From Malacoraja senta (Eukaryota), in NCBI GenBank assembly GCA_038087875.1, contig CM075981.1:40238001-40302000 (forward strand): 64,000 nucleotides of DNA, written 5' to 3'. The position numbers and the translations under genes are program-made. The notes below the pieces were generated by a model. That model had not been told where the DNA came from and ran no database searches. It was given only the letters and a program-made list of their open reading frames with translations. Positions 2,510 through 61,809 of this stretch are shown here, piece by piece; the stretch's first letter is position 1, and each line of letters opens with the position of its first letter.

Positions 2510-2716
2510 AATGTTCATTGTTAGCTGAGAAGAGAATGAACCGTTCTACATTTCTGTATTATCCTCTCCTTTGATCTGTCATTTTCACACCATACCCCTC
2601 CATATCTCTAGACGCCCTCTCCCCCGACTCTCAGTCTGAAGAAGGGTCTTGACCCGAAACATCACCCATTCCTTCACTCCAGAGTGCTGCCTGTCCCGCT
2701 GTGTTACTCCAGCAGT
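2510..2716 (+). mobile_element. Penelope-like pLTR fragment with degenerate hammerhead motif
   Basis: CTGAAGAAGGGTCTTGACCCGAAAC at 2636, followed by the shared PLE terminal sequence. Confidence 0.7.
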
Positions 2717-2899
2717 CCGAATTCCATACTAGTAGACATGTCAACTTTCCCCAAGCTCGAACAACCTGAGGAACTGATGGATCTGTTGCTTAACCCATGA
2801 GCTCTTTAAACATTATTTCACTTATTCTTGTTCTTCCAGGGTATGCTTGAATTTAGTTTGTACAACTCACACTGTGTAAATTGGCATGATCGCCGTCAT

Positions 2900-3275
2900 C
2901 TATAGGTGCAGGAGTGGGCCATTTGGCCCTTCGAGCCTTCACCACTATTCAATATGATCATGGCTAATCATCCTAAACCAGTACCCCGTTCCTGCTTTCT
3001 CCCCATATCCCTTGATTCCGTTAGCCCAAACTCTCTCTTGAGAACATCCAGTGAATTGGCCTCCACTGCCCTCTGTGGCAGAGAATTCCATGAATTCACA
3101 ACTCTTTGGGTGAATTTTTTTTTCCTCATCTCAGTCCATATTCTTAAACTGTGACCCTTGGTTCTGGACTCCTCCAACATGAGGAACATTTATCCTGCAT
3201 CAAGCCTGTCCAATCCCTTAAGAATTTTATATGTTTCTATAAGATGCCCTCTCATCCTTCTAAATTCCAGTGAAT
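2900..3275 (-). mobile_element. CR1 LINE 3' fragment
   Basis: Minus ORF ESRTKGHSLRI...FTQRVVNSWNSLPQRAVEA, the typical CR1 ORF2 C-terminus. Confidence 0.8.
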
Positions 3276-3662
3276 TCCTGAAGTTTATTTCAGTTCACTA
3301 TGTAGCTATATTATGAATAAATGAAGATGATTCACAGTCGCTTGCTATTACCCAGTGGGATGGCAGTCTATTGGAGTATGAAGCGGAAGTCAGCGGATAA
3401 ATCAGCGTGGTCAATGTGGAGCTACGGGTGGGGAATGTTGGACACCCTGCTCATTTCCAGATTTTAATTTTTTTGGTTTTGATTCATCTCAGATGGCTCC
3501 ATGGCTTTCTCCCCGAGTAGTTATGTAGCTGCAATGGAATGAGAGAGTTCAGATAAAATCTGTGAGGGAAGAGTGGGAGCAAGAGAAAGTAGTCTGCAAT
3601 GAAGGGTGTGAGATGTTCTGCTTTCAAAACCCTGCATAAAAGGGAAAGATTATTTGTCCTGA

Positions 3663-3865
3663 TCGAGTGGGGGGATCTTATAGAAACATATAAAAATATA
3701 AAAGGACGGGACAAGCTAGATGCAGGAAAAACATTCCCAATGTTGGGCGAGTCCAGAACCAGGGGCCACAGTCTTAGAATGAAGGGGAGGCCATTTAAGA
3801 CTGAGGTGAGAAAAACTTTTTCACCCAGAGAGTTGTGAATTTGTGTAATTCCCTGCCACAGAGGA
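3663..3865 (+). mobile_element. CR1 LINE fragment
   Basis: GDLIETYK...ESRTRGHSLRMKGRPFKTEVRK. Confidence 0.8.
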
Positions 3866-4499
3866 CCTTCACCGATTTCCTTGCAACCCATTTTCCCTTG
3901 CATGTCGATTCCCTCCCCCTTGATTTTCCTGCCATCCACTTGCAGTAGAGGTACTTCATGGCAGTTTATTAACCACCGACACATTTCTGTGATGAGAAGG
4001 GTAACCAGAGCATTCAAAGGAAACCGGTGATTATTGGGTAAACGTGCAAACTCCACAGGGACAGCACCAGAAAGTCTGAAGAAGGGCCTCGACCCGAGAC
4101 ATCACCTATTCATTTTCTCCAGCGATGCTGCCTGAGTTACTCCAGCTTTTTGTGCCTATCTTCAAGCAAAGAAGCAACAGGTTGCGCCATTGTGTGACTT
4201 TTTCTTCTGTGCTAGCCCATGATACCCAGGTGAAAAGTGATGCGTACACTTCATTTGGATTACCCCCAGAGTTAACTAGCCTGCCAGTGCTCTGTGTTTC
4301 ATTGATACCTGAATGGTTCTTTGGGTCAGCAATCAGAGCCGCATCACCACACCTGGAGTCTGTACCCCATCAATTCCAAACATTCAGTTGCATAGGAAGA
4401 TGAAACGAAGGAAGATTTGTAAATCATAACAGAAGTCCATCTGAAGTTATGAATGATGTACGGCTTTGTGTAGTAATTCCCTATAATACTGCAAGGGCC

Positions 4500-5306: not shown

Positions 5307-5660
5307 TTGAAGATAGACACGAAAAGCTGGAGTAACTCAGCGGGACAGACAGCATCTCTGGAGAAAAGGAAAAGATGACGTTTCGGGTCCAGACCCTTCT
5401 TCAGACTGAGAGTCAGGGGGAAGGGAAATGAGAGATGTAGATGGTGATATAGAGAGATATAGAACACATGAATGAATGCAAAACAATAATGATGATAAAG
5501 GAAACAGGCCATTGTTAGCTGTGTCCTGTGTGAGATCGTATTACAGACAATGAGATTCAACAAGACGACTGAACCTAGTGCAACGACTCGGGTGGGGGAG
5601 GGACGGAGAGAGAGGGGAGATGCAAGGGTTAGTTGAAGTTAGAGAAATCAATATTCATAC
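5307..5660 (-). mobile_element. Penelope-like pLTR fragment with hammerhead motif
   Basis: GACGTTTCGGGTCCAGACCCTTCTTCAG at ~5377-5404 is the reverse complement of the motif; homologous to 18367-18640. Confidence 0.75.
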
Positions 5661-6595: not shown

Positions 6596-6809
6596 GAAAA
6601 TTGACTTCTCCAATTTCAGGTAGTCCCTGCTTTCTCCTTCTTTCTACTCCCCTTCCCAGCTCTTCCACAGCCCACTGAGTCCGCTTCTTCCTTTCTTCTT
6701 CCCCACCCCCACATCAGTATGAAGAAGGGTCTCGACCCGAAACGTCGCCTATTTCATTCGCACCATAGATGCTGCGTCACCCGCTGAGTTTCTCCAGCAT
6801 TTTTGTCTA
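6596..6809 (+). mobile_element. Penelope-like 3' fragment with 15-bp target duplication
   Basis: IDFSNFR* end of the GIY-YIG ORF, hammerhead-like motif at ~6717; CCTTAAGCAACACTT at 6581-6595 and 6810-6824. Confidence 0.75.
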
Positions 6810-6835
6810 CCTTAAGCAACACTTAACTTGTTCTG

Positions 6836-7753
6836 TGTAGGAAGGAGCTGCAGATGCTGGTTTAGACCGAAGATAGACACAAAATGCAGAAGTAACTCAG
6901 CGGGACAGGCAGCATCTCTGGAGAGAAGGAATGGGTAAATGCCTACTATGTACTGTGTGCTGAAGCAAAGCAAGAATTTCATTGTCCTATCAGGGGCACA
7001 TGACAATAAACTCACTTGACTTGACTTGACTTGGGTGACTTTTCGGGTGGAGACCCATCTTCAGACTGAGAGTCAGGGGAGAGGGAGACTAGAGATATGG
7101 AAGGGCAAGGTGAGGATAAGATCAAAGCAGCCGATACAGTCATAGTCATAGAGTGATACAGTGTGGAAACAGGCCCTTTGGCCGAACTTGTCCACACCAA
7201 CCAACATGACCCAGCTACACTAATCCCAACTGCCCGCGTTTGGTCCATATCCCCCCCCAAACCATGTACCTGTCTAACCATATCCCCCCCAACCATATCA
7301 ATGTATCTGTCTAACAGTTTCCTAATTATTGGGATAGACCCTGCCTCAACTACCTCCTCTGGCAGGTTGTTCCATACACCCACGGTGTGAAAAAGTTACC
7401 TCTCAGATTCCTATTAAATCTTTCCCACCTTCACCATAAATCTATGTCCTCTGATCCTCGATTCATCTGGGCAAGAAACACTTGTGCATCTATCTGATTT
7501 ATTCCCCTTGTGATTTTATACACGATGATCAAGGCAAAGTAGAATGGTTCATCGTTGGCTGAGGGGAAGGTGACAACGAGGCATACAACCAGGAAAATTA
7601 ATCAGGAGGACAGTGAAACTAGGGAGGGGGAGGGACAGAGAGAGAGGGAAAGCAATGTTTACTTGAAGTTAGAGAAATCAATATTCATACAGCTGTATAT
7701 ACTTAACTCAATCATCAACTTAATTAATCAATTAATAATTAAGTTAATCATAA
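6836..7753 (-). mobile_element. Penelope-like pLTR carrying nested LINE 3' ends (6940-7032; CR1 7137-7525)
   Basis: PLE tail and terminal sequence; TTAACTTGTTCTG duplicated at 6823-6835 and 7754-7766. Confidence 0.7.
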
Positions 7754-8669: not shown

Positions 8670-10730
8670 CGACAATGGCTGACTAGGGATAGTCAGCATG
8701 GTTTTGTACAAGGGAGATAGACACAAGGTGCTGGAGTCACTCAGCGGGACAGGCAGCATCTCTGGAGAAAAGGAATGGGTGATGTTTTGTGTCGAGACTT
8801 TTCTACAGACAGCATCTGCAGTTCCTTCCTACACATTTGTACATGGGAAATCGTGTCGCACGAATCTGAGCTTTTTGAAGATGTGACCAGAGATGAGAGC
8901 AGAGATGTAGACATTGTATATATGGATCTCAGCAAGTCATTTGACACTGTTCTGCATGGTAGGCTGATCTGGAAGATTAGATTGCATGGGATACAAGGAA
9001 AGACTGGATACAAAATTGGCTACATGGAAGAATGCAGAGGGTGATGGTGGAAGGTTGCTTCTCGGACTAGAGGCCTGTGACTAGTGGTGTGCCTCAGGGG
9101 TCGGTGCCGGGCCCGTTACTGTTTGTCATCAACATCAATGATTTGGATGAGAACATGTTCAAGAAGGAACTGCAGATGCTGGAAAATCGAAGGTAGACAA
9201 AAATGCTGGAGAAACTCAGAGGGTGCAGCAGCATCTATGGAGCGAAGGAAATAGGCAACGTTTCGGGCCGAAACCCTTCTTCAGACTGATGCAGGGTGGG
9301 GGGGCGGGGGGCGGGAAGAAGAAATGAAGAGGAGGAGCCGGAGGGAAGAGGGAGAGCTGAGAAGGGGAGGAGACAGCAAGGGTTACCGGAAATTGGAGAA
9401 GTCAATGTTCAGGCCACTGGGGTGCTGACTGCCCAAGCGGAATATGAGGTGCTGCTCCAGTTTCCGGTGGTGCTCACTCTGGCAATGGAGGAGGCCCAGG
9501 ACAGAAAGGTCGGATTCGGAATGGGAGGGGGAGTTGAAGTGCTGAGCCATGTGGACGAGAACATGTCAGGCATGATTCACAAGTTTGCAGATGACACTAA
9601 AGTGGGTGGCATGTGTCATGGTGGCATGGTGAAGATGGTTGTCGAAGATTGCAGCAGGATCTTGATTGGTTGGGCAGGTGGGCTGAGGAATGCTTGATGG
9701 AATCTAATGTAGTGAGGTGTTGTATATTTGGAAGTCTAACAAGGGCAGGACTGAGGCAGTGAATGGCAGGACCTCTGGGGAGTATTGTAGAGCAGAGGGA
9801 TTTAGGAGTGCAGGCACATAGTTCCTTGAAAGTGGCATCACAGGTAGATAGGGTGGTCAAAAAGGCTCTCAGCACATTGGCCTTCTTCAGTCAGAGTATT
9901 GAGTATAGAAGTTGGTATTGGCTATAGACCATGTTGCAGTTGTATGAGATGTTGGTGAGGCCACATTTAGAGTATTGTGTTCAGTTCTGGGCACCATGTT
10001 GTAGCAAAGATGTTGTCTAGCTGGAAAGGATGCAAAGAAGATTTATGAGGATGTTGCCAGGTCTTGAGGGCCTGAGCTATGGGGAGAGATTAAGCAGGCT
10101 AGGACTGTGTTCCTTGGAGCACAGGAGGACGAGGGGTGATCTTATGGAGAGAGATGTACAAGATCATGAGAGGAATAGGTAGGGTAAATGCTCAGTCTTT
10201 TGCCCAGAGTAGGGGAATCGAGAATCAAACGTGGGCAGGCGGCTTTGACTTCCGATTTAGAACTGGCTTATTCATAGAAGGCAGAGGGTTGTGGTAAAAA
10301 GAAGGAAGATATTCTGGCTGGAGGTCTTTGACCAGTGGAGTTCTGCGGGGATCTGTGGTGATATATATAAATGACATGGACATAAATGTAGATGGGTTGG
10401 TGAGTAAGTTTGCTGATGACGCCAAAAATGGAGGAGTTGGGAATGCTGTCCGAAGATCCAGCGAGATTTAGATCAGTTGCAGACATGGGCAGAAGAATGG
10501 CAGGTGGAGTTTAATCTGATCAAGTATGAGGTGTTGGGTGATTGAATGTAAGGGGAGAGTATAGATATGACTGTGGTGTTTAAGAGGCTTTCACATAGGT
10601 ACATGGAAGTGCAGGAATAGAGGATTAAGGATCATGTGCAGGTAGATGGGATCACTTGGGGATAATGCCCAGTGCAAACATTGTGGTTATTGAGAGAGAA
10701 ACACTGTGTTCCTGTGCTGTTCTATGTTGT
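8670..10730 (+). mobile_element. Degenerate CR1 RT fragments (at least two) interrupted by PLE insertions
   Basis: VDIVYMDLSKSFDTVLHGRL, SGVPQGS and KFADDTKVGG motifs. Confidence 0.8.
9159..9551 (-). mobile_element. Penelope-like element (subfamily B): GIY-YIG C-terminus plus pLTR
   Basis: Minus strand reads AQHFNSPSHSESDLSVLGLLHCQSE; hammerhead motif at ~9257-9284; TGGA(T/C)GAGAACATGT duplicated at 9144-9158 and 9552-9566. Confidence 0.8.
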
Positions 10731-14266: not shown

Positions 14267-14530
14267 AAGACATAAAATGCTGGAGTAACTCAGCAGGTCT
14301 GAAGAAGGGCTTCGGCCCGAAACGTTGCCTATTTCCTTCGCTGCATAGATGCTGCTGCACCCGCTGAGTTTCTCCAGCATTTTTGTGTACAGGTCGAGAA
14401 CATGGATAGGCGACGTTTCAAGTCAGGACACTTCTTCAGACTGATTGCAGGGGTGGGAGGGGAAATAAGGTGGAAGAGTGGAGGGGCAGGACAAAGCATG
14501 GCAGGTCATAGGTGAACATTGGCAGATGAA
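14267..14530. mobile_element. Composite Penelope-like terminal fragments
   Basis: Subfamily B arm with an intact hammerhead motif at 14299-14326, embedded in an inverted subfamily A piece. Confidence 0.7.
14295..14330 (+). ncRNA. Minimal type I hammerhead ribozyme motif
   Basis: AGGT-CTGAAGA-A-GGGC(TTCG)GCCC-GAAA-CGTT-GCCT: conserved core, 4-bp stem II with UUCG loop, palindromic ACGT stem III, 4-bp stem I. Activity not shown. Confidence 0.62.
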
Positions 14531-18366: not shown

Positions 18367-20377
18367 ATAGATACAAAAAGCTGGAGTAATTCAATGGGTG
18401 AGACAGAATCTCTGGAGAAAAGGAATAGGTGACGTTTCGGGTCAAGATCCCTCTGCAGACTGAGAGTCAGCGGTTAGAGAAATGAGAGATGTAGATGGTG
18501 ATGTAGAGAGATACAGAATAAATGAATGAAAGATATGACTCAACAAGATGACTCTGAAACTGGTACGTCTTGGTTGAGGGTGGAATGGAGAGAGAGGGAA
18601 TGCAGGGGTTACTTGAAGTTAGAGAAGTCAATATCCATACCCCTGGGTTGTAAGCTGCCCAAACAAAATATGAGGTGTATTCTGTTCCTCCAATTTGCAT
18701 TTAGACCCATTAGGACAATGGAGGAGACCTAGGACAGAAAGGTCAGTGTTGGAATGGGAAGGAGAATTAAAGTGTTTAGCAACTGGGAGATCAGGTAGTT
18801 CAGGCAGACTGAGCGAAGGTGTTCAGCGAAACAATCGCTAGTCTATGTTTGGTCTCATCGATGTATAAGAGTCCACATCTTGAACAATGGATACAATAGA
18901 TGAGGTTGGAGGAGGTGCAAGTGAACCATTGCCTAACCTGAAAGGATTGTCAGGGTCCTTGGATGGAGTCAAGGGAGGAGGTATAGCGACAGGTGAAACA
19001 TCTTCTGCGGTTGCAGCGGAAGGTACCTGGGGAGGGGGTAGTTTGGATGGGGATGATTTAACCAGGAAGTTGCGGAGGGAATGGACTCTGCAGAAGGCGG
19101 AAAGATGTGGAGATGGGAAGATGTGGCTGGTGGTGGGATCCCGTTGGAGGTGGCGAAAATGTCGGAGGATTATTCTTTTTCACCCAGAGAGTTGTGAATT
19201 TATGGAATTCCCTGCCACAGAGGGCAGTGGAGGCCAAGTCACTGGATGGATTTAAGAGAGAGTTAGATAGGGGCTGGTGAAATCAAGGGATATGGGGAGA
19301 AGGCAGGCACGGGTTATTGATAGGGGACAATCAGCCATGATCACAATGAATGGCGGTGCTGGCTCAAAGGGCTGAAATGGCCCCCTCCTGCAACTATTTT
19401 CTATGTTTCTATGTTTCTAAATGATGTGTTGTATGTGATGGCTGATGGGGTAAAAGGTAAGGACTAGGGGGACTCGTTGCAAATAGGGGGAGGGGGAACC
19501 AGGGCAGAGCTGCGGGGTACCGAGGCAACACGTATGAGGGCCTCATCTTTGATGGAAGAGGGGAACCCCCGTTAATCCAGCAGTATGAATATTGACTTCT
19601 GTATCTTCAGGTAACCCTTGTTTTCCCTCTCTCTCCATCCCTCCCTCATCCTAGTTCTCCGACCAGTCTGACTGTTCTCCTGATTACATTTTACCTTTGT
19701 TTGCTTTGTTGTTAACTTCCCCTAGCTAACAATTCTACATTTTCTTTGATCTCTTGTCCTCACACCTTAAGGGCCTGTCCCACTTGGCCATCATTTGCGC
19801 CTCACTTACGCGTCATATGTAAAATAGGTCGACGCGTGGGGTGCGCGTGGGAGACGCACGCATTGTGCATAGTGAGGTGTGCAATCGCATGCGGTGGCGC
19901 ACGGAATCGGGCGGCACTCCAGGATTTCGTAGTGTAACGAAATCCTCGCACGCCACCTGCGTGACGTATCGCGTACGCATGCTGACGCATTTGCGTCGTA
20001 TGCTGGCGTCCCGACGTCTCACGTGTATCGCGTGGTGACGCATGGTTACGTTACCGAGCCTGATCGTCCGTAACCATGCGTCACCGCGCGCCGCAGGGTA
20101 TTCTAATGATGTCACGCGCACCAGACGGTTGTGCTGACGCGTGATTTGCGCGCGACGTCGTGCATCACGACACGTCAACCTATTTTACATATGACGCGTA
20201 AATGAGGTGCAAATGACGACCAAGTGGGACAGGCCCTTCATCCTTCCATTTCTCTCTGTCTCCCTCTCCTCTGACACTCAGTCTGAAGAAGGGTCTCAAC
20301 CTGAAGCGTCACCCATTCCTTCTGTTCAGAGATGCTGCCTGTCCCGCTGAGTTACTCCAGCATTTTGTATCTATCTT
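18367..20377 (-). mobile_element. Penelope-like element with GIY-YIG endonuclease remnant and an inverted 5' pLTR
   Basis: Minus strand reads PPGTFRCNRRRCFTCRYT...FTCTSSNLIYCIHCSRCGLLYIDETKHRL (Cys linker plus GIY-YIG). 19575-20377 is an inverted copy of the 18367-18660 pLTR. Nested CR1 (19175-19420) and MITE. Confidence 0.85.
19770..20237. mobile_element. PIF/Harbinger-type MITE, CpG-rich
   Basis: TIR AGGGCCTGTCCCACTTGG; flanks TTA/TCA; interrupts a PLE pLTR. Confidence 0.85.
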
Positions 20378-22967: not shown

Positions 22968-23175
22968 CTGTGTAGGAAGGAACTGCAGATGCTGGTTTAC
23001 ACCGAAGATAGACACAAAAGGCTGGAGTAACTCAGCAGGACAGGCAACATCTCTGGAGAGAAGGAATGGGTGTCATTTCGGGTCGAGTCTGAGGAAGGGT
23101 TTCAATCCGGAACGTCACCCATTCCTTCTCTCCAGAGATGCTGCCTGTCCCGCTGAGTTACTCCAGCATTCTGTT
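22968..23175. mobile_element. Palindromic PLE terminal insertion
   Basis: Two inverted arms of the PLE terminus, with the tail on the left arm only. Confidence 0.75.
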
Positions 23176-23199
23176 TGAGGCATAACCCTGACAGTCAGT

Positions 23200-24450: not shown

Positions 24451-24709
24451 CTATATCAGACTACAAGTCTGAAGAAGGGTCTCGACCTGTAATGTCACCC
24501 ATTCCTTCTCTCCAGAGATGCTGCCTATCCCGCTGAGTTACTCCAGCATTTTATTTCTATCTTCTTGTCTGTGTGGACTTTTTTGTTTGTTTAATTTATT
24601 ATTGTCACGTGTCCCGAGGTACAGTGCAACGCTTTTATTGTATGCTAACCAATAAAGCCATCCACAGTGTACGGATAAAGGATAACATGTACAGCATTTA
24701 ATGCAAGAT

Positions 24710-25460
24710 AAAGACACTTGTCCCTTGAGCTCCCCCCTCACCTCTACCAGGGACCCCAGCAGTTCTTCCAGGTGAGACAGAGGTTCACGTGCACCTTCTG
24801 TAACCTGACCTGACATTCCCGATTTAGCCTCCTGAACATCGGCTGGACAAAATGTTGACTTGGTGGCCGTTTCGCTGAACACTTGCCCTTGGTTCCCCAA
24901 GACCTACCGGATATCCCGGCTGCCATCCATTTTAACTCCCCTTCCCATTCCCCTGCTGACTTTTCAGTCCTAGGCTCCTCCATTGCCAGAGTGAGGACAA
25001 AGGCAAAGTGGAGGAGCAGCACCTTGAGTTACTAGGAACCTCATGGTGTGAACATTGAATTCCACAATTTGAGGTTAGCTCTAACAACCCTCGCTCTCCC
25101 TTCCCTTCCTCCCCCACAACCCTCTTTCTTTTCTACCTACACCCCCCCCCCCCTCCCAATATTCCTTCCTCTGGTTTCACAATTCGCAACTTGCCAATCC
25201 TTTTGTCTCACATGTTCTGTTTTTTAATCTCTGGCCTCTATCCAATGATCTACTGATCAAAAACCCTTCCGAGTAGATGTTCACCTATACTGCCATACAC
25301 TTACTTGCCGTACTTAGTCTTGCCCCTCCTCCCCTCCAGCTTTCTTATCCCCCCCCACCCTTCCCCTACCATCAGATTGAATAAGTGTCCCAACCTGAAT
25401 CATCGCCTATCAATGTTCTCCTGGGATGCTCCCTGACATGCTGAGTTACTACAGCACTTT
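24710..25460 (+). mobile_element. Penelope-like element, GIY-YIG remnant plus pLTR
   Basis: GPQQFFQVRQRFTCT...RFAEHL...HFNSPSHS peptides. Confidence 0.75.
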
Positions 25461-25570: not shown

Positions 25571-25708
25571 GGAAATGTGCAGGAAAGGAATGCAGATGCT
25601 GGTTTAAAGAAGTCTGAAGAAGGGTCTCGACCCGAAACGTCACCCATTCCTTCTCTCCAGAGACGCTGCCTGTCCCGCTGAGCTACTCCAGCATTTTGTG
25701 TCTAGCTT
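25571..25708. mobile_element. Short PLE insertion inside CR1 with 13-bp target duplication
   Basis: AGATTTATGAGGA at 25558-25570 and 25709-25721; inverted tail followed by a plus-strand arm. Confidence 0.8.
25611..25645 (+). ncRNA. Minimal hammerhead ribozyme motif (subfamily A consensus)
   Basis: CTGAAGA-A-GGGT(CTCG)ACCC-GAAA-CGTC; predicted cleavage after C25641; stem I is weak. Confidence 0.58.
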
Positions 25709-26280
25709 AGATTTATGAGGATGTTGCCAGGAATTGAAGGTGTGAGCTTGGGCAGATTAGGGCTTTATTCTTTGGAGCGCAGGAGGATGAGGGTTGATCT
25801 TATAGTGGTCTATAAGATCATGAGAGGAATAGTAGGGTAAATGCAGAGACTTTTACCCAGAATACTGGAACCAAGATCCAGGGGACATAGGTTTAAGGTG
25901 AGAGGCGAAAGATTTAATAAGAATCTGAGGAGAAACGTTTAAACTCAGAGGGTGGTAGGTATACAGAAAAAGCTGCCAGAGGAGGTAGTTGAGACATGTA
26001 CAATAACACCATTTGTAAACATCTTTTCTGCCTGCATGTGATCCGTATCCCTCTATTTCCTGCATTCCCATGTGCCTGTCCAAAAGCCTCTTAAATGCCA
26101 CTATCATATCTGCCACCACCACCACCCTTGGCAGCACATCCCAGGCACCCACCATCCTCTGTGGAAAAACTTGCTCCGCACATCTCATTTAAACTTTGCC
26201 CCATCCCAGTTTAAAGCTATTCCCTCCAGTCTTTCACATTTCCACCTTGCACACAGAGAAGAAGAAGTCAAACTGATGCT

Positions 26281-28389: not shown

Positions 28390-29095
28390 ATATCTCTTTA
28401 AAACGCCATGCACACCAAAAACGCACATCAACACTTCTACTTCCTTGAAGGCTTAGGAAGGTTTGGGATGTCCCCTACAACTCTCACCAACTTCAACAGA
28501 TGCGCTGCAGAAAGCATTTGATCGAGATGCATCACAACATGGTTTGGGAACAGCTCCATCCAAGACCACAAGAAATTGCAAAGAATTGTGGACGCAGCCC
28601 AGACCATCGCACAAACCAATCTCTCTTCCATTGACTCCATTTATACCTCACGCTGCCTCGGCAAGGCCAGCAGCATAATCAAAGACGAGTCGCACCCTGG
28701 CCACTCCCTCTTCTCTCCTCTCCCATCAGGCAAAAGGTATGAGAACGAACACCTCTAGATTCAGGGACAGTTTCTTCCCAGCTGTTATCAGGCAACTGAA
28801 CCATCCTAACAACAACTAGAGAGCAGCCCTGAACTACTAGTGTATCTGCACACTGTGAATGGCTCGATTGTAATCATGTGTAGGAAGGAACTGCAGATGC
28901 TGGTTTATACCGAAGATAGACACAAAATGCTGGAGTAACTCAGCGGGGACAGACAGCATCTCTGAAAGAAATGGGTGACGTCGAGTTGAGACCCTTCATC
29001 AGAGTTTATTGTCTTTCTGCTGACTGGTTAGCACCCAACAAAAGTTTCTCTGTACCTTGGTACACGTGAGAATGAACTAAACTCAGCAAACTCAA
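28390..29095 (+). mobile_element. Rex1/Babar-type LINE 3' part with nested PLE end (28877-29005)
   Basis: LQRIVDAAQTIAQTNLSSIDSIYTSRCLGKASSIIKDESHPGHSLFSPLPSGKRY. Confidence 0.8.
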
Positions 29096-32034: not shown

Positions 32035-32820
32035 ACTCAGTGAACACCTCTGCTCAGTCCGCCTAAACCAACGCGATCTCCTGGTAGCCAAACACTTTAA
32101 ACTCCCCCTCCCATCCCCACACTGACCTTTCTGCCCTGGGTCTCCTCCATTGTCAGAGTGAGGCCCAATGCAAATTGGAGGAACAGCACCTCATATTTTG
32201 CTTGGATAGTTTACACCCCAGCGGTATGAACATTGACTTCTCTAACTTCAAGTAACCCTTGCTTTCCCTCTCTCCCCATCCCTCCCCCTTCCCAGTTCTC
32301 CCACCAGCCTTACTGTCTCAAACTACATTTTATCTGTTTGCTTTGTTGTTACCTTTTCCCAGCTAACAATGATCTATTCTACATTTCCTTGATCTCCATT
32401 CCCTTTGTCACGTTTGTACGCTTTACACTTCCTTATCTACGTATCTCCTGCTCCCCTGACATCAGTCTGAAGAAGGATCTCGACCTGAAACGTCACCCAT
32501 TCCTTGTCTCCAGAGATGCTGCCTGTCCTGCTGAGTTAAGTGCCTGTCCCACTTGGCCATCATTTGCGCGTCATGCAGATGGCGCGCAAAGATTTTGTAC
32601 ATCACAAAATCCTGCGACGCCGCACGCAACCGCGCGTCACTGCCAATGCCAACACACACCATGCGCGCGTAATGCACACCATGCGCGCATCACGTGCGTG
32701 TCGTGCGTCGTGACGGGTAAATGATGTCGCGTAAATTATGGCCAAGTGGGACATGCCCTTTACTCCAGCATTTTGTGTCTATCTTCGGTTTAAACCGGTA
32801 TCTGTAGTTCCTTCCTACAC
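32035..32820 (+). mobile_element. Penelope-like 3' fragment (GIY-YIG C-terminus, pLTR, tail)
   Basis: EHLCSVRL..VAKHFNSPSHPHTDLSALGLLHCQSE..LEEQHLIF; hammerhead-like motif at ~32467. Confidence 0.8.
32539..32759. mobile_element. PIF/Harbinger-type MITE
   Basis: Splits the PLE sequence CTGAG-TTA-CTCCAG; perfect TTA duplication at 32536-32538 and 32760-32762. Confidence 0.9.
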
Positions 32821-35670: not shown

Positions 35671-36112
35671 AAGGGGCTACAAAATAAAAGCATAACGTGT
35701 AGGGAATACCCAGCAGATTAGGTCGCACTTGTGGAAAGACAAACATACAGCATTGGCTAAATGACCCTCCATCAGAGCTCATAAGTGAGAAAACAAGTAT
35801 GTTTTAAGCTGCAGCCAGTTTTGGGGTGTGCGCAGAGAACAAAAGGATTATCTGTGATAGGGTGAAGATCAAGTTTATCTAGAAGAAATAATTGGTTTTG
35901 ATAGTACCCTATTACTCAAGTGAGACAGTTTGATCATCTGGTGCAGTATAAATAACGGCAGGTGAATGTGGGCACAGGTAATGAAAATACATTTGCTGGA
36001 ACTGTGTGATGCAGAACACAGCATTTACTAGAAATCAGCATCAAATCAGGAAGCATCTGTGGAGAGAGAGAATTGAATAAATGCTGCAGCCGTCTAACCT
36101 TCCATCAGTATG

Positions 36113-36328
36113 TGTAGGAAGGAACTGCAGATGCTGCTTTATATCGAAGATAGACACAAAATGCTGGAATAACAGTGGGACAGGCAGCATCTCTGGAGAG
36201 AAGGAATGGGTGACGTTTTGGTTCGAGACCCTTCTTCCGATTCAGTCTGTGGAAGGGTCGCGACCCGAAACGTCACCCATTCCTTCTCTCCAGAGATGCT
36301 GCCTGTCCCGCTGAGTTACTCCAGCATT
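36113..36328. mobile_element. Palindromic PLE terminal insertion
   Basis: Inverted arms meeting at ~36240, each with a degenerate hammerhead motif. Confidence 0.75.
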
Positions 36329-36519
36329 GAGTGTTTCATCAGAACTGGCCAGTTCAGGAAAAGCAAGAGCACATGGAGCACATCAATTCCATAGACAAAT
36401 ATCCATAGCTTCTCATCCATGATGGATGAGAAGCTTAAGTCTCCTCTGAGGCCTGAACAGAGGTGTTCTGCAAAGCAATTAACCAGATCCAAAATTATTG
36501 AAGTTAGTAGATGTAGAAG

Positions 36520-45201: not shown

Positions 45202-45204
<3 letters not shown>

Positions 45205-46669
45205 TTTGTGTGTGTTTTTTGTTTTTTTTGTTACAAACTATATAAGCAGGCCCACAAGGAGCTTCCAGAAGGAGTCGATACAATCAGTACAAACAATATA
45301 CACTAAGAAGTCGGCAAGTATGACAAGAATGTCAGCTATTTCTCTGTGTGTTTATATTGGACCATGTTTGAGTGCTGTGAATGGCCCCTCTGTGTTCGTG
45401 AACAGACCCTCTTGCTAGTCGGCTCTCCGGCAAGTGGATGCAAATCTCTGTATGAACACTTTGAAAGAGCACTCTCAAGTTTTTCTAGAAGGGAAATTTG
45501 CCCGGTAACAGGTGGGCAATATTCCTTCATATAAAGCACGAAACTATCGATTCTGATGAAACTCTCCACTATTCGGCCAACTCATCTATGTTGATCAACG
45601 TGTCCTATTTAAGCTAATTCCGTTCATAAGTGATAGGAGCAGAATTAGGGCATTCGGCGCATCAAGTCTACTCCGCCATTCAATCATGGCTGACCTATCT
45701 CTCCCTCCTAACCCCATTCTCCTGCCTTCGCCCCATTAACCCTGACACCCATACTAATCAAGAATCTATCTCTGCCTTAAAAATATCCACTGACCTGGCC
45801 TCCACAGTCACCATTTGCCCATGTTTACCACCTGGAGTGGGGTGGATGTGCAAAGACAGAGGGTGTTTATTGTTTAAAATAAATAATATGCGGTTCACTG
45901 TAAGTATCGGATCTGTGACTGGAACATGAATAAGAACAGGAGCAGAAGGCCTGATTTTTTTTAATCTATTTTTGTCTCCCAAACATTGTTAACTTCTTTT
46001 GATGGAAACGTTCCCATTTAACGCAGTTAGTAAGAACATCAGACATTCATGGGGCAGCTATGGGATGAACTGGGTAAAGAGCAAAGATTGAGTTTTCGGT
46101 CCTGTCAATCCCTCTCAGGACAGTTACAGCATGGACTGGACATGGAGTAAAGATCCATTGGTACTCTCTTGTACTCGTCAAGTACCACACAACTTAAAAA
46201 TGCATGGATATAGCCCCTATCTGTGTTTCAATCCTTCAATCACCAGCAAATACCACTATATTATGCTAATATTTTTACATTGAGGATCTTCCTGCAGTGA
46301 TTATCAGGTTAGAGCTTAAAAAATGCCAATTAATGGATTCTTCTGGGACGATGGGTGGATATATTCAGTAAATCAAGGAGGGCTCATGAATTCACCTTCA
46401 GTAGTTCAAATGAATAGTGGAGGAAAGAACTGCAGATGCTGGTTTAAACCGAATATAGACACAAAACTCTGGAGTAACTCAGCGGGGCAGGCATCATCTC
46501 TGGAGAGAAGGAACAGGTGATGTTTTGGGTCGAGACCCTTCTTATTCTGAAGAAACATTTAAATGAATACGTTATTTATTCTCTCTCACCCCTTTAACCT
46601 TACCATTGCATGGAAGGAATAATTTTGATTGTTTGAATCAATCTTGCTCCGTACTTCCAGTTCTTGCAG

Positions 46670-53900: not shown

Positions 53901-54365
53901 ATCCTCCGCCGCTGTAGGCCACGCGTGGTCCACGCGCTGGAACAGTGCTCGGTCCAGTCAAGACCCAACAAATATCTTGCTTGCCTATATCTATATTCCA
54001 CACATGGTTACGAATGCAGCATAGCAGCACATATTTATCCAGCTTCCAGTCCATATATATACAGCTGATCACTGTAAGCATAGTCCCTATAAACCCCATA
54101 CATATTAGGCACATAAATAACTTGCTTAAATAAGCCATCATGCATTAATAGCTCTTCTGTGTTACTTTACAAGGCAATATTGTTGATTTCCGTCTAAATC
54201 CAGGTCAGCCACTACCTTCGCCACCTCCTGAGAGTAAACTTAATCCATTTGCATAGCTTCTAATCAGCTTTTACTTTAAAACTATTCTAACTAAAATCAA
54301 TTAAAAAGACTATTTTCATTTGGAAAGATGACCACTTCGCTGTCCCCTGATTCTTGTACCGGATG

Positions 54366-54598
54366 TGTAGGAGGGAACTGCAGATGCTGGTTTAAACCGA
54401 AGATAGACATAAAAAGCTGGAATAACTAAGCGGCTCAGACAGTATCTCTGGAGAAAAAGAATAGGTGATATTTTGGTTCTAGACCCCTCTTCAGACCGCC
54501 TGAGTCTGAAGAAGGGTCACGACACGAAACGTCAACCATTCCTTTTCTCCAGAGATGCTGTCTGACCCGCTGAGTTACTGCAGCTTTTTGTGTCTATC
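54366..54598. mobile_element. Palindromic PLE terminal insertion with 15-bp target duplication
   Basis: TTCTTGTACC(G/A)GATG at 54351-54365 and 54599-54613. Confidence 0.8.
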
Positions 54599-54970
54599 TT
54601 CTTGTACCAGATGGTTTGGTATTGTAACTGTATCTGGAGACCAGCCTGAGTACCTTTTGAAACCAATTAGAATCCCTGCAGTTTATTTGTTGTTTCCCCC
54701 TTCATATTGTAGACAGGTTGTGAGGAAACTGCTGCTAACCTGAAAGTGAGGTGGAGCAGAAGTGTAAATCGCAGCAGGCCAATGTAAAGGGTGCGGGCAG
54801 AACATCCATGGCTTAATCAGCAAAATAGCATCACAACAGCATGGAAACAGGCCCTTCAGCCCAACTTGCCCATGCCGTCCAAGATGTCGCACGTCACACC
54901 TTCCTGCATTTAGCCCATTTCCCTCCAAATCTTTGCTATCCATGCACCTGTCCAAATGTCTTTTAAATGT

Positions 54971-55167
54971 AGACAAAAATGCTGGAGAAACTCAGCGGGT
55001 GCGGCAGCATCTATGGAGCGAAGAAAATAGGTAACGTTTCGGGCCGAAGGATTTCGGCCAGAAACGTTACCTATTTCCTTCGCTCCATAGATGCTGCCGC
55101 ACCCGCTGAGTTTCTCCAGCATTTTTGTCTACCTTCGATTTTCCAGCATCTGCAGTTCCTTCTTGAA
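54971..55167. mobile_element. Palindromic PLE terminal insertion (subfamily B) with 18-bp target duplication
   Basis: ~80-bp inverted arms; CAAATGTCTTTTAAATGT at 54953-54970 and 55168-55185. Confidence 0.88.
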
Positions 55168-55194
55168 CAAATGTCTTTTAAATGTTGTTAAGAA

Positions 55195-58254: not shown

Positions 58255-59340
58255 AGAGGCCTGTGACTAGTGGTGTGCCTCGCGGATCGGTGCTGGGCCC
58301 ATTGCTGTTTTGTGGTTCATGTCAAGGATTTGGATGAGAATGTACAAGACATTAGTACGTTTGCAGATGACACTAAAGTCAGGGGATCGTAAACAGTGAG
58401 GATGCTCAGCACAAATTACAGCAGGATCTTCATCAGCTGGACATGTGGGCCTTGGAATAGTTAATAGAGTTTAATGCAGTGTGAGGTGTTGCATTTTGGG
58501 AAATCAAAGCAAGGCAGGACCAAAGATCCTATAGCAAGCAAGATAGATCACTCGACGAAAAAGAAGTAGTACGGTCATTGGCAGATTCATGGGTAATTTT
58601 CGGCCCCATTTCCGTAACCGGCTTCCGTCTCTGCACCAAAGATCCCATAGCGGAGCTAGTGCGGAGAGGGAAGCCGGTTACGGAAACTTCCTCGTAAAAA
58701 TAAAAGTTATTTGGTTAAAATCATCTCCTCATTTTCAGAATTTTAATTTATTAACACAAACTGTTCGCCCGCAACGTTGATTACACTGCGAGTCGGGTCG
58801 GGTCGGGTTGGGTTACGGAAATGGATGAACCATATCAAATGCCCTTGGAAAACTTTTTGGATACTTCTTTAGTTATACAACACGTTGATGAGGCCTAATT
58901 TGGAGCATTGTGTTCAGAAGAATGTCAATAAACTGGCAAGATTGAAGAGAAGACTTGGGAGTTTGAGCTACAGGGAGAGGTAGGCCAAGCTAGGACTTTA
59001 TTCCTTGGAGTGAACGAGGATTGATCTTATAGAGGTGTATAAAATCATGAGTGGAGTAGGGTGAACACACATTCTTTTACCCAGAGCAAGGGAGTCATGA
59101 AACAGAGGACATCGGCTTAGGTTGAGATGGGAAAGATTTAATGGGAACCTGAGAGGCACCTTTTACACACAGTGGATAATGGGTACATGTATCGAGGTGC
59201 CAGAGGAGATAGTTGAGACAGTTACTATAACAGCATTTAAAGGACATTTGGACAGGTACATGGACAGGAAAGGTTTAGAGGGATATGGGGCAAATGTAGG
59301 CAAGTGCGATGAGAGTAGATGGGGGCATCCTGATTGGCAT
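58255..59340 (+). mobile_element. Degenerate CR1 RT and 3' fragments, interrupted at ~58520-58830
   Basis: [13 protein letters not shown] and FADDTKV motifs. Confidence 0.7.
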
Positions 59341-59364
59341 GAACCAGTAAAAGACTGCATTCAC

Positions 59365-60380
59365 TATATTACATCCCCTCATGATCTTGGGCACCTCAAT
59401 AAATCACACTTCAGCCTCCTGTGCTCCAATTAATAAAGTCCTAGCTTGCTAAATTTCTCCCTATAGCTCATGCCCTTGAGTTCTGGCAACATCTTCGTAA
59501 ATCTTCTCTGCACTCTGCCCAGCTTAATGACATCCTTCCTATAGCAGAGTGGCCAAAACTGAACATGATACTCCAAATGCAGACTCAGCAATGTCTTATA
59601 CATCTGTAGTTCCTTCCTATAAATCTTTGTTGTAAACCAGCATCTGCAGTTCCTTCCTGAAACGTCACCCTTTCCTTCTCTACAGAAATACTGCCTGCCC
59701 TGCTGAGTTTCTCCAGCATTTTGTGTCTATTTTTGGTGTAAACCAGCATTTGTAGTTCCTTCTTAAACGTCCCAACTTCTTTACTCAATACCATGACTGA
59801 TGAAGGCCAATGTAACAAAACCCTTCTTTACCCCTGTTACCACATTCAAAGAACTGTGCACCCATACTCCTAGATCCCTCTGTTTTACAACACTTGCCAA
59901 GGCCCTACTAAGGCCTTCATGGTTTGACATCCCAAAATGGAACACCTCACACTTACCTGCATTGAACTCCATTTATCATTCTTCTGCTGCATTGTACAGC
60001 TGATTAAAATCTTACTGTAATTTTTGATAACCATTTTCACTGTCTATGCTGCCGCCAACTTTGGTGTTCAATGTAAACTTACAAATCATGCCATACACAC
60101 TCTCATCTGAATTGTGCATTTAAACGACAAGCAACAAATAGGTCCAGCACCCATCACTGAGGTACGCCACCCGTCATAGGTCTCCAGTCCGAAAAACGAC
60201 ATTTCACCACTACCCTCTGCATTCTTCCATGTAGCCAATTCATGTATTCGGCATCTAGCTTTCCCTGCGATCTAACGTTCCCGGGCAGCCTACCATATCA
60301 AAGCCTTACTAAAGTCCCTATAGACAGATTTAGGGCCTTGCCCATATCAAACTTCTTGGCTACTTCTTCAAAAAGCTCAA
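59365..60380 (-). mobile_element. Degenerate CR1 RT fragment with nested PLE ends (59600-59765)
   Basis: MEFNAGKCEVFHFG..QRDLGVWVHSSL. Confidence 0.72.
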
Positions 60381-60479
60381 AATTGGTGCATTAGTTTGGG
60401 AATGCTAGATATTCTAAGCAACTGTTACTTTTTTTGTTCTTATCCTATGTTCTGAGCATAGCTTGCATCATTTTAGGTA

Positions 60480-60784
60480 TTTTAGTTGAGAGATACAATG
60501 TGAAGCAGGCCCTTCAGCCCAGCGAGTCCGCGCCGACCAGCGATCCCCGTACACAAGCACTATCCTACACACACGCTGGGGTCAATTTACAACTTGACCA
60601 AGCCAATTAGCCTACAAACCTGTACGTCTTTGGAATGTGGGAGGAAGCCAGAGATTCTAGAGAAAACCCATGCAGATCACGGGGAGAACGTACAAACTAC
60701 ATACAGACAAGCACCTATAGTCAGGATCGAACCCGGGTCTCTGGCGCTGTAAAGCAGCAACTCTACCGCTGCGCCACCGTCCCG
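60480..60784 (-). mobile_element. tRNA-derived V-type SINE
   Basis: Homologous to 33125-33422. Confidence 0.85.
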
Positions 60785-61809
60785 TCGTAATGATATATTT
60801 GGTATGTATGCTGTGCATGTATGAATGTAAACATCCTATCTTTCCCTCACATAATTTCTTGACTTTCATCTGAATGCAATTAATAATGGGTGGAGATTGT
60901 TTACTCTAGACTCAAGGAGCCATGAGTTGCAAGTTCAAGCACTCCCTGCATATTCTCTTCTTGTATCTTCTTGTGTTTTTTCCTTATTTTTTCCTTTGTC
61001 CTAAAATCTTTTAAAAATATGTTTTGTCTTTTTAGTACCTATCATTGAGTCACTTAATTCTCACTTAATTCAGGAAGAGAGTGGGGAGATTTTATGTGTT
61101 CTTTGTCTGACCTGGGAATTTTTCCTTGTGCGTCTCAGAATGGGGAATTTGCCAGGGTATTTCCCTTTACAGTTTGGGCTATGAATCTGAGCAGAGATCA
61201 GCCGAAAGCTGGTGCTTGTTACTGAATTTACAGTAGATTGTGCAAGCTGCACAGGTTTTGTTCCCCACATCCTACCAGCTGATCACTGAGGAATTTGTAA
61301 TCATTTGATGAACATGGAACAGAAACTGCAGCAGCGGTTGCCAGTTTCAGGTGGAAAGATGGTGTAAAACATCAAAGTGCAGCGGTATGTTCACTTTGGA
61401 GAGAACTGTATTGGCAGTTGTGAAGACTCAGAAGAATGAACATACCATTTTTGAAAAGATATTTAAAAACTTGATGTTTTTCATTTAACAAAATAGGCAA
61501 CGGTCCATGAGAGGAATAGATTAAATCTCAGCTTTGAAAAGGGAGCTAGATGAATATCTGAAAAAGAAAACATTTCGGGATTTCGGAGAAAGTGCAAGGG
61601 GGAGAGGAACTAATATGATTTTCTGAATCCAGTCTGAAGAAGGATCTCGACCTGAAATGTCACCCATTCTTTCTCTCCAGAGATGTTGCCTGTCCCGCTG
61701 AGTTACTCCAGCATTTTGTGTCTATCTTTGATTTGTACCTGTTATTGCTATGTATCACATTTGTTGCACTTCTCAGGATTGAAGCGATTGGAATCTGGGT
61801 TGCTCAGTT

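What the first reader, a model, noticed from the sequence alone, without database searches (positions are those of the whole stretch)
2636..61665. High-copy minimal hammerhead-ribozyme motif in Penelope-like termini, with stem II covariation
Seen: about 15 intact or degenerate copies of CTGAAGA-A-[stem II]-GAAACGT(C/T). Plus-strand copies lie at 2636, 4076, 6717, 14299, 20283, 24469, 25614, 32467, 36247, 54506 and 61634; minus-strand copies at ~5404, 7064, 9284, 18458 and 46545. Stem II varies while keeping its pairing: GGGT-CTCG-ACCC (25622), GGGC-TTCG-GCCC (14307) and GGGT-TTCG-GCCC (9284, minus). The motif lies downstream of GIY-YIG ORF ends. Known: CUGANGA...GAAA...UH is the hammerhead core; PLE pLTRs carry minimal type I hammerheads whose palindromic stem III (here ACGT) supports dimeric cleavage; an extra A after A9 occurs in natural hammerheads. 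Inference: two PLE subfamilies kept a self-cleaving RNA, and at roughly one copy per 4 kb the genome could hold a very large number. Caveat: stem I is only 2-4 bp, so monomer activity is doubtful.
Basis: partly seen in the sequence, partly recalled or inferred. Interest (0 to 1): 0.78.

Follow-up and report, generated by a model that had tools for sequence, protein, structure and literature searches.

The report
Penelope retroelement tails with minimal hammerhead
The commonest short repeat in this stretch of a cartilaginous-fish-like genome is the end-piece of a Penelope-like jumping gene, and it carries that family's already described stripped-down hammerhead ribozyme motif; most copies here are mutated relics, so the finding is real but of a known kind.

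Summary
CTGAAGA-N13-GAAACGT (up to 1 mismatch) occurs 13 times against 0 expected, and about 34 copies of the carrier repeat lie in the 64 kb. Of these, 23 keep the motif region and 4 are fully intact (25614+, 5404-, 9284-, 14299+).

The carrier is the 3' end (pseudo-LTR) of Penelope-like elements (PLEs):
- Broken GIY-YIG endonuclease reading frames end about 180-300 nt upstream of several copies (about 600 nt in one interrupted copy).
- Full-length relatives fetched from public data pair an RT-type motif with a C-terminal GIY-YIG domain, and have the same motif in their terminal repeats.
- Copies end at two sites about 35 nt apart, the published PLE "tail".
- Six composite or palindromic insertions each have a 9-14 bp target duplication.

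The motif meets every sequence feature of the PLE minimal hammerhead of Cervera and de la Pena 2014, except that helix I is only 2 bp. Stem II covariation is weak within the window but clear across PLE lineages. Self-cleavage is not shown, and Rfam hammerhead models do not match.

It is a new member of a known kind. This scan already found it on other DNA of the same genome. One lead remains: 13 of about 33 copies begin 1-3 nt upstream of the ribozyme core.

The parts
25611..25715 (+). Best-preserved subfamily A unit. It has AGT, the intact minimal hammerhead (25614-25640, predicted cleavage after C25641) and the tail to the short 3' end. It is preceded by a 32-nt inverted tail-extension piece (25575-25606). 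The whole 25575-25715 unit is flanked by a 12-nt target duplication.
14299..14325 (+). Intact subfamily B motif with stem II GGGC/GCCC (C-G at the fourth pair) and U at position 17.
9155..9287 (-). Intact subfamily B copy (motif 9258-9284, stem II with a U.G wobble) running to the long 3' end that includes the 35-nt tail extension. A GIY-YIG C-terminal remnant lies upstream at 9386-9565.
5309..5407 (-). Intact subfamily C copy (motif 5378-5404) with the short 3' end. The end of the ORF (MNIDFSNF) lies at 5635-5658.
18803..18949 (-). GIY-YIG core remnant (49 aa, containing NLIYCIHCSRCGLLYIDET) of the PLE whose motif lies at 18432-18458. This piece was the query for the homology search.
32088..32252 (+). 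C-terminal end of a PLE ORF (ending GMNIDFSNFK, then a stop), 215 nt upstream of the motif at 32467-32493. The tail of this copy is split by an insertion of about 230 nt (32529-32759) and resumes at 32760-32821.
24859..25071 (+). GIY-YIG C-terminal remnants upstream of the degenerate subfamily D motif at 25377-25403.
54363..54601 (.). Palindromic composite insertion. The inverted arm is 54363-54495 (long end with tail extension, motif 54468-54494) and the direct arm is 54500-54601 (short end, motif 54506-54532). It is flanked by a 14-nt target duplication with 1 mismatch.
36105..36334 (.). Palindromic composite insertion with motifs at 36213-36239 (-) and 36247-36273 (+), 7 nt apart. The left arm has the tail extension. 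A 9-nt target duplication flanks it.
22969..23176 (.). Palindromic composite insertion. The inverted arm is truncated inside stem II and the direct arm carries the motif at 23089-23115. A 9-nt target duplication flanks it.
54966..55170 (.). Subfamily B palindrome. Both arms are truncated inside stem II, so there is no CTGAAGA box. The right arm has the tail extension. A 14-nt target duplication flanks it.
8715..8838 (-). Composite insertion made of a degenerate motif copy (8782-8808) plus a 27-nt inverted tail-extension piece (8810-8836). A 13-nt target duplication flanks it.
2636..2662 (+). Degenerate motif (ACGT changed to ACAT), with PLE 3' UTR upstream.
4076..4102 (+). Degenerate motif. 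The copy starts at the hammerhead and has the short 3' end at 4163.
6719..6745 (+). Subfamily B tail with an A-type stem II; C3 is mutated to A.
7038..7064 (-). Degenerate motif. The tail is replaced after about 36 nt by a (CAAGT)n run. The ORF end lies at 7665-7688.
14413..14439 (-). Subfamily D motif with intact core boxes and a weakened stem II (GTGT/ACTT).
18432..18458 (-). Degenerate motif (A6 changed to C) downstream of the GIY-YIG remnant.
20283..20309 (+). Degenerate motif (GAAG in place of GAAA), with PLE 3' UTR upstream.
24469..24495 (+). Degenerate motif. The copy starts at the hammerhead and has the short 3' end at 24564.
28876..29003 (-). Copy that starts at the hammerhead and has the long 3' end; 2 nt are deleted in the GAAA box.
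46417..46560 (-). Copy with the long 3' end and a mutated core (motif 46520-46546). A mini-inverted stub of about 6 nt sits at its 5' end. A 12-nt target duplication flanks it.
61631..61732 (+). Copy that starts at the hammerhead and has the short 3' end. The motif at 61634-61660 has CpG decay.

Best explanation
The repeats are 3'-terminal pieces (pseudo-LTR region) of several subfamilies of endonuclease-encoding Penelope-like retroelements. Each carries, about 95 nt (short end) or 130 nt (long end) before its 3' end, the minimal type I hammerhead known from metazoan PLEs. Its parts are CUGAAGA, one unpaired A, a 4-bp helix II closed by a tetraloop, GAAA, the palindromic CG at positions 15.2/16.2 with no loop 3, and U plus C or U at the cleavage site.

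Shown here: the identity of the element, the architecture of the motif, and its conservation across PLE lineages with compensatory changes in helix II.

Inferred from published work: in master copies the motif can self-cleave PLE RNA only when two units pair through ACGU, or when the element's protein assists. Activity is probably low, because helix I is 2 bp and a competing fold sequesters the core.

The copies in this window are mostly 5'-truncated, dead-on-arrival or decayed insertions. Many were made as composite inverted insertions in one event. Their cores have been eroded chiefly by CpG transitions.
For: Motif: 13 hits against 0 expected, and about 34 copies of the tail.

PLE identity:
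- Broken reading frames with the CCHC-like and GIY-YIG motifs and a common C-terminus (MNIDFSNFK) end about 180-300 nt upstream of copies 32467+, 25377+, 18458-, 9284- and 5404- (about 600 nt for 7064-).
- The 49-aa piece 18803-18949(-) finds 339 proteins at E<=0.001.
- The long hits P0126, P0130 and P0151 (882-900 aa) have Pfam GIY-YIG above its cut-off exactly at the matched site. They also carry an R(F/Y)IDDI RT motif about 250 aa upstream.
- Their loci L001 and L002 are bounded by direct repeats that hold a minimal hammerhead of the same build. L003 and L004 hold one about 490 and 175 nt after the ORF.

PLE insertion hallmarks (as described in PMC8557442 and PMC11167929):
- Two classes of 3' end, about 10 copies at reference position ~102 and 11 at ~137.
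- Six composite inverted units, each with one long and one short end and a 9-14 bp target duplication.

Motif features match the four listed by Cervera and de la Pena.

Helix II across lineages: 36 of 36 cells paired, 2 of 4 pairs with changes on both sides, and 0 of 500 shuffles reach the covariation score.

Invariant core positions outside CpG differ from the consensus at 6.6% against 13.2% for non-CpG tail positions (Fisher p = 0.004).
Against: - No Rfam hammerhead family matches at gathering score or at E<=10. This is expected for a motif without helix III, but it means there is no independent model support.
- Helix I is only 2 bp.
- The minimum-free-energy fold of the RNA pairs AGAAGGG with UCCUUCU downstream instead of forming helix II.
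- Within the window helix II covariation is not above shuffles.
- Only 4 of 23 copies are intact, and no two intact copies lie in tandem.
- No RT domain of a PLE is present in the window itself, because all copies are 5'-truncated.
- Published assays found low or protein-dependent activity, and cleavage was dispensable for insertion in vitro.
Confidence: 0.85

Rival explanations
1. The core-like sequence is conserved mainly for something other than RNA cleavage. It would mark or structure the 5' end of the RNA that is copied, acting as an internal promoter or initiator, a protein-binding site, or a turn-around point for composite insertions. On this view the hammerhead is vestigial or parasitic.
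For: - 13 of about 33 copies, including the direct arm of all six composite insertions, begin 1-3 nt upstream of C3.
- The junction reads TCAGTCT, which resembles an initiator, and it follows a pyrimidine tract plus CAG.
- Helix I is 2 bp.
- A competing helix that covers the core is kept in 88.5% of cells, and only 3 of 500 shuffles reach its covariation score.
- Hammerhead mutants did not affect insertion in vitro, and Naiad PLEs thrive without hammerheads.
Against: - The same catalytic boxes, the extra nucleotide, G10.1-C11.1 and the palindromic 15.2/16.2 recur in unrelated PLE lineages whose flanks share no sequence. These include a U3/A8 double change in L002 that keeps the core pair. That pattern is what selection on a ribozyme fold predicts.
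- The initiator and splice-site matches are short and could be chance.
- The shuffle control can be exceeded by related sequences that have no structure.
Confidence: 0.1
2. The repeat is the shared tail of a LINE/SINE pair, or a tRNA-derived SINE read on the other strand, and the hammerhead resemblance is chance.
For: - An APE plus RVT_1 LINE lies just upstream of the 54506 copy.
- On the opposite strand GGGTCGAGACC resembles a Pol III B box, and TAACTCAGCGG resembles an A box about 50 nt upstream of it (read directly).
Against: - The 54363-54601 unit has its own 14-nt target duplication, so it is a separate insertion beside the LINE.
- ARAGORN finds no tRNA-like gene.
- It is the motif-strand 3' end that is constant and the 5' end that is truncated.
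- Long copies run upstream into GIY-YIG reading frames on the motif strand.
- The same motif lies in the terminal repeats of full-length PLEs from elsewhere.
Confidence: 0.03
3. The palindromic units are MITEs of a DNA transposon with terminal inverted repeats.
For: Several units of about 230-270 bp are near-perfect palindromes with TGTGTAGGAAGG at an outer end, and they are flanked by target duplications.
Against: - The arms are unequal: one has the 35-nt extension, the other ends short or is truncated at variable points.
- Target duplications vary from 9 to 14 bp.
- Single-arm copies outnumber palindromes.
- This arrangement is the published PLE insertion pattern.
Confidence: 0.02

Closest known systems
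Minimal hammerhead (min-HHR) of metazoan Penelope-like elements (Cervera and de la Pena 2014, PMC4209133)
   Same: - The CUGANGA and GAAA boxes.
[quoted passage not shown]
- The G10.1-C11.1 pair.
- A palindromic 15.2/16.2 with no loop 3, which implies dimeric use.
- Location in the PLE terminal repeat.
- Massive copy number, mostly as single truncated units, some as close pairs on opposite strands.
- Consensus families that differ by compensatory changes.
   Different: Helix II is 4 bp here, against 6-8 bp in the Schistosoma and Drosophila examples. Helix I is 2 bp rather than 4-5 bp, as in the D. virilis variant. The host appears to be a cartilaginous fish; the papers read here do not name that group for PLE min-HHRs, although a 2026 preprint reports hammerhead retrozymes in one chondrichthyan.
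Poseidon PLE of Anolis carolinensis (PAc; Frangieh et al. 2024, PMC11167929)
   Same: It is a vertebrate PLE with RT and GIY-YIG, with a hammerhead in the pseudo-LTR. It has two adjacent reverse-transcription start sites that give an optional 30-40 bp tail, which is mirrored here by 3' ends about 35 nt apart.
   Different: In PAc the ORF starts at stem II of the hammerhead. No copy in this window reaches an ORF start, so this could not be compared. Protein-assisted cleavage was shown for PAc and not for this family.
Penelope of Drosophila virilis
   Same: It has a 2-bp helix I. According to PMC4209133, an intron 3' end abuts the 5' end of helix I. Here a pyrimidine tract plus CAG sits in the same place.
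   Different: D. virilis has a bulge in helix II and a 2-nt palindromic insertion in helix III. Splicing was not tested here.
Non-LTR retrozymes (tandem hammerhead repeats derived from PLE pseudo-LTRs)
   Same: Short non-coding units derived from PLE ends that carry a hammerhead.
   Different: Retrozymes are head-to-tail arrays that can give circular RNAs. In this window the short units are dispersed singles or inverted pairs, each with its own target duplication.

Membership tests
Endonuclease-encoding Penelope-like element (3' end / pseudo-LTR) | C-terminal GIY-YIG endonuclease preceded by a CCHC-like motif, on the same strand and upstream of the terminal repeat | tested here: met
   Remnants lie upstream of six copies. 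Pfam does not score the short broken pieces. Their homologues P0126, P0130 and P0027 score GIY-YIG above the cut-off at the aligned site.
Endonuclease-encoding Penelope-like element (3' end / pseudo-LTR) | Telomerase-like reverse transcriptase N-terminal to the endonuclease | tested here: inconclusive
   No PLE RT is present in the window, because the copies are 5'-truncated within about 1 kb of the 3' end. The homologues P0126 and P0151 have an R(F/Y)IDDI motif about 250 aa before GIY-YIG, and P0080 has a weak RVT_1 hit. Pfam RVT_1 does not score P0126 or P0151, and the PDB search was blank.
Endonuclease-encoding Penelope-like element (3' end / pseudo-LTR) | Optional 30-40 bp tail extension at the 3' end, often at only one end of an insertion | tested here: met
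   3' ends fall into two classes about 35 nt apart, roughly 10 short and 11 long. Each of six composite units has one long and one short end. The published description was read.
Endonuclease-encoding Penelope-like element (3' end / pseudo-LTR) | Heavy 5' truncation, with partial tandem or adjacent inverted 5'-truncated copies made in one insertion | tested here: met
   Six inverted composites are each flanked by a 9-14 bp target duplication. A partial tandem lies at 59601-59768.
PLE minimal hammerhead (min-HHR) | Catalytic boxes CUGANGA and GAAA, then U16.1 and H17 | tested here: met
   Present in the consensus. Ten of 23 copies keep all core boxes, and four of these also keep a 4-bp helix II.
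PLE minimal hammerhead (min-HHR) | [quoted passage not shown] | tested here: met
   It is A in 20 of 23 copies. It is A in L001, L002 and L004, and U in L003.
PLE minimal hammerhead (min-HHR) | G10.1-C11.1 closing pair and a helix II supported by compensatory changes | tested here: met
   Across nine sequences from six lineages, 36 of 36 cells are paired, two pairs show changes on both sides, and 0 of 500 shuffles reach the score. Within the window alone the result is not significant.
PLE minimal hammerhead (min-HHR) | Palindromic 15.2/16.2 with no loop 3 (helix III formed only between two units) | tested here: met
   GAAA-CG-U in the consensus and in L001, L002 and L004; ACAUGU in L003.
PLE minimal hammerhead (min-HHR) | Helix I of about 4-5 bp | tested here: not met
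   Two pairs only in nearly all window copies, as in the published D. virilis variant. L002 and L004 have 4 bp.
PLE minimal hammerhead (min-HHR) | Self-cleavage after position 17 | not testable with these tools
   This needs transcription and cleavage assays or RNA end mapping.
Rfam hammerhead families (types I, II, III, HH9, HH10) | Match to a curated covariance model | tested here: not met
   No hit at gathering score on the whole window, and none at E<=10 on 25300-25800. Those models expect a helix III.
Non-LTR retrozyme | Head-to-tail tandem array of hammerhead-bearing units | tested here: not met
   No array was found. The copies are dispersed or inverted, each with its own target duplication.
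tRNA-derived SINE on the opposite strand | tRNA-like head and a constant 3' end on that strand | tested here: not met
   ARAGORN finds nothing. On that strand the 5' end is constant and the 3' end varies.

The most novel reading that the evidence does not exclude
The RNA that this PLE family copies has a fixed 5' end 1-3 nt upstream of the hammerhead core. That end could be made by an internal initiator in the pseudo-LTR, or lie at an intron acceptor as in D. virilis. If so, the abundant 100- or 135-nt 'hammerhead-capped' units are retrocopies of a short pseudo-LTR transcript that behaves like a SINE. On such an RNA helix I cannot exceed 3 bp, so the conserved core would act in trans or in dimers, or would serve another role at the 5' end.
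Probability: 0.3. Interest if true: 0.5.

Novelty: new member of a known kind. Interest (0 to 1): 0.25.

Why it matters
The finding adds a cartilaginous-fish PLE family to the known range of minimal hammerheads. It shows in one small window the full set of PLE insertion signatures: two 3' ends, one-sided tails, and inverted composites with target duplications. It does not change what is known about ribozymes. The clustering of 5' ends at the first bases of the ribozyme, if general, would bear on how PLE template RNAs are made, and on the still unsettled question of what the hammerhead does for these elements.

Tried and rejected
- Rfam scans, at gathering score on the whole window and at E<=10 around 25614, gave no hammerhead hit.
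- Pfam on the broken GIY-YIG pieces gave nothing meaningful. Identity had to come from a profile-free HMMER search and Pfam on its long hits.
- A PDB sequence search with P0126 was blank.
- Pfam RVT_1 did not score P0126 or P0151.
- The DNA of the Hypanus sabinus hit P0010 could not be fetched because the file was too large.
- The idea that the tail belongs to the APE-type LINE at 50899-54068 was dropped once the neighbouring palindrome proved to have its own target duplication.
- The MITE reading and the antisense tRNA-SINE reading were considered and rejected.
- Thermodynamic folding of monomer and dimer did not recover the hammerhead fold. I treat this as a caveat rather than a refutation, because a 4-bp intermolecular helix III is beyond what such predictions favour.
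- A long-range helix I between CUCAG upstream and CUGAG about 40 nt downstream was looked at by eye and judged unconvincing.

Full report
**Observation.** The pattern CTGAAGA-N13-GAAACGT with up to one mismatch occurs 13 times in the window, against 0.00 expected from 100 dinucleotide-preserving shuffles. A looser scan and blastn with the surrounding repeat find about 34 copies of a 100-135 nt unit on both strands. Of these, 23 still cover the motif. Scored strictly, 4 of 23 copies are intact: 25614+, 5404-, 9284- and 14299+. The strict criteria were all core boxes, a 15.2/16.2 pair, U16.1, H17 and a 4-bp helix II.

**What the repeat is.** Read on the motif strand, all copies share a constant 3' part and differ at the 5' side. 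This is the signature of a retroelement copied from its 3' end.

Long copies continue upstream through about 180-300 nt of pyrimidine-rich sequence (about 600 nt in the interrupted 7064- copy) into broken reading frames with a common end (GMNIDFSNFK, then a stop). Further up they carry a CCHC-like motif followed by NLIYCIHCSRCGLLYIDET, and then AEHL and HFNSPSH. Pfam does not score these short broken pieces.

A HMMER search of the 49-aa piece 18803-18949(-) against 1.84 billion representatives gave 339 hits at E<=0.001. Most were short fragments at 55-80% identity. One came from the stingray Hypanus sabinus, which suggests a batoid or other cartilaginous-fish source.

The long hits P0126, P0130 and P0151 (882-900 aa) score Pfam GIY-YIG above its curated cut-off exactly where the window peptide aligns, at their C-termini. 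About 250 aa upstream they carry an R(F/Y)IDDI motif of reverse-transcriptase type. This is the domain order of endonuclease-encoding Penelope-like elements (PLEs). The RT assignment rests on motif inspection only, since Pfam RVT_1 and the PDB search were silent.

The APE plus RVT_1 LINE at 50899-54068 is a separate element. The palindromic unit beside it has its own target duplication.

**PLE insertion hallmarks.** Three features that the literature gives as peculiar to PLEs are present.

- Two 3' ends. The 3' ends fall into two classes about 35 nt apart, roughly ten copies ending at CTATCTTC and eleven running on for 35 nt more. This is the optional 30-40 bp tail, which Frangieh et al. 2024 traced to two adjacent reverse-transcription start sites.
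- Composite inverted insertions. Six units consist of an inverted, variably truncated arm next to a direct arm. Each unit is flanked by a 9-14 bp target duplication, so each was made in one event.
- A one-sided tail. In all six units exactly one end carries the tail extension, as drawn by Craig et al. 2021.

**The motif against the published minimal hammerhead.** Cervera and de la Pena 2014 defined the PLE min-HHR by four features:

- the two catalytic boxes;
- a conserved G10.1-C11.1 pair;
- a palindromic 15.2/16.2 without loop 3, so that helix III forms only between two units.

They also noted families linked by compensatory changes, massive copy numbers of mostly single truncated units, and some pairs on opposite strands. 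All of this is seen here. The one departure is helix I, which is 2 bp in this family. The same paper reports a 2-bp helix I for D. virilis.

Rfam hammerhead models do not match at any threshold tried. This fits a motif with no helix III, but it leaves the call resting on the descriptor-type features above.

**Comparative support.** The loci encoding the long protein hits give an independent test.

- L001 is a 3.1-kb unit bounded by 140-nt direct repeats. Each repeat has CTGAAGA-A-GGCC...GGCC-GAAACGTC.
- L002 has the same build with the U3/A8 core double change that Cervera and de la Pena described.
- L003 (a crinoid) and L004 carry the motif about 490 and 175 nt after the ORF stop.

The flanks of these motifs share no sequence with the window's repeat. 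In an alignment of nine sequences from six lineages, all 36 helix II cells are standard pairs. Two of the four pairs change on both sides (G-C, C-G and U-A; U-A, C-G and U.G). No shuffle out of 500 reaches the covariation score, and sliding the partner by one column drops pairing to 50-67%. The motifs in L001-L004 were found with a core-only pattern, so helix II was not selected for. Two core-only hits inside ORFs without a stem were set aside.

**Within the window.** The fourth helix II pair is U-A in subfamilies A and C and in 6719. It is U.G in 9284 and 55041, and C-G in 14299 and 55060. Statistically this is one cell with a double change and is not above shuffles.

Invariant core positions outside CpG differ from the consensus at 6.6% (15 of 228). 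Non-CpG tail positions differ at 13.2% (180 of 1368), with Fisher p = 0.004. Much of the tail figure reflects differences between subfamilies.

The motif holds three CpGs, in loop 2, at C11.1-G12 and at C15.2-G16.2. These account for 30 of 78 substitutions, and 26 of the 30 are C>T or G>A. Methylation-driven decay therefore explains why most copies are dead.

**Mechanism.** Shown here are the element's identity, the motif's architecture and its conservation.

Inferred from published assays: single units do not cleave, dimers or extended-helix-III versions cleave weakly, and in Anolis cleavage needs the element's protein and is dispensable for insertion in vitro.

Two local caveats apply. Helix I is 2 bp. 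The predicted minimum-energy fold pairs AGAAGGG, which includes core residues, with UCCUUCU about 10 nt after the cleavage site, and UCUG with CAGA. That alternative is kept in 88.5% of cells across the copies, and only 3 of 500 shuffles reach its covariation score. It may be a regulatory inactive conformer, or an effect of relatedness.

**A lead beyond the finding.** Thirteen of about 33 copies begin 1-3 nt upstream of C3. These include the direct arm of all six composite insertions. The remaining truncated copies start at scattered positions, so the template RNA probably has a fixed 5' end there.

The site reads TCAGTCT, which resembles an initiator, and it follows a pyrimidine tract plus CAG, which resembles a splice acceptor. 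In D. virilis an intron ends at the same place relative to helix I, and the internal promoter overlaps that intron. These matches are short and untested. Earlier notes of this scan reported the same clustering, and the same PLE reading, on other pieces of this genome. I treated them as leads and re-derived the points here.

**Verdict.** This is a genuine, abundant PLE terminal repeat carrying the known minimal hammerhead. It is a new member of a known kind, mostly in relic form, and of low to moderate interest.

Noticed in passing
window 50899-54068 (+): A non-LTR retrotransposon broken into four ORFs, with an Exo_endo_phos (APE) domain and RVT_1. It is unrelated to the PLE tails next to it.
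   Followed up: partly
window 25611-25661 and equivalents in other copies: The predicted lowest-energy fold pairs AGAAGGG (core plus the helix II 5' strand) with UCCUUCU downstream, and UCUG with CAGA. This sequesters the hammerhead core. The pairing is kept in subfamilies A, B and C with G.U changes, and a similar CUUCUU...CAG complement follows the motif in L004.
   Followed up: partly
window, 1-3 nt upstream of each motif (e.g. 4073, 24466, 61631, 36244, 54503, 25611): Insertion 5' ends cluster at AGT just before CTGAAGA. The site reads like an initiator (TCAGTCT) and, in long copies, follows a pyrimidine tract plus CAG that looks like a 3' splice site.
   Followed up: partly
window 46546-46560 (-): At the 5' end of this copy a 6-nt stub (CTTCAG, the reverse complement of the first bases of the motif) precedes the motif inside the target duplication. 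It looks like a minimal version of the inverted arm.
   Followed up: no
window 32529-32759: An insertion of about 230 nt splits the tail of the 32467+ copy. It shares short matches with other places in the window (for example 29528-29738 and 20170-20238), so it is probably another short interspersed repeat.
   Followed up: no
window 6963-7031 (-): The tail of the 7064- copy is replaced after about 36 nt by a (CAAGT)n microsatellite and unrelated sequence.
   Followed up: no
window 9584, 10409, 52958, 58360 (+): Four LINE-type RT motif C remnants (K[FY]ADDTK) show that several decayed non-LTR elements share the window with the PLE tails. A different RT-like FMDDL lies at 1797 (-).
   Followed up: no
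opposite strand of the tail, e.g. window 36141-36245 (+): On the antisense strand GGGTCGAGACC matches the Pol III B-box consensus at 8 of 9 specified positions. TAACTCAGCGG resembles an A box about 50 nt upstream of it. ARAGORN sees no tRNA, so this is probably coincidence with the palindromic helix II.
   Followed up: partly
L002:39-67 and 3113-3141: A full-length PLE from a marine metagenome carries the U3/A8 covariant hammerhead core (TTGAGAA) and a 4-bp helix I. L001 is a 3135-nt unit with 140-nt terminal direct repeats.
   Followed up: partly
L001:~120-135 versus the window tail extension (e.g. 36109-36125): The 11-mer TGTAGGAAGGA occurs in the sense strand of the L001 terminal repeat. 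It also occurs in the antisense of the window's 35-nt tail extension. Its meaning is unknown and it may be chance.
   Followed up: no
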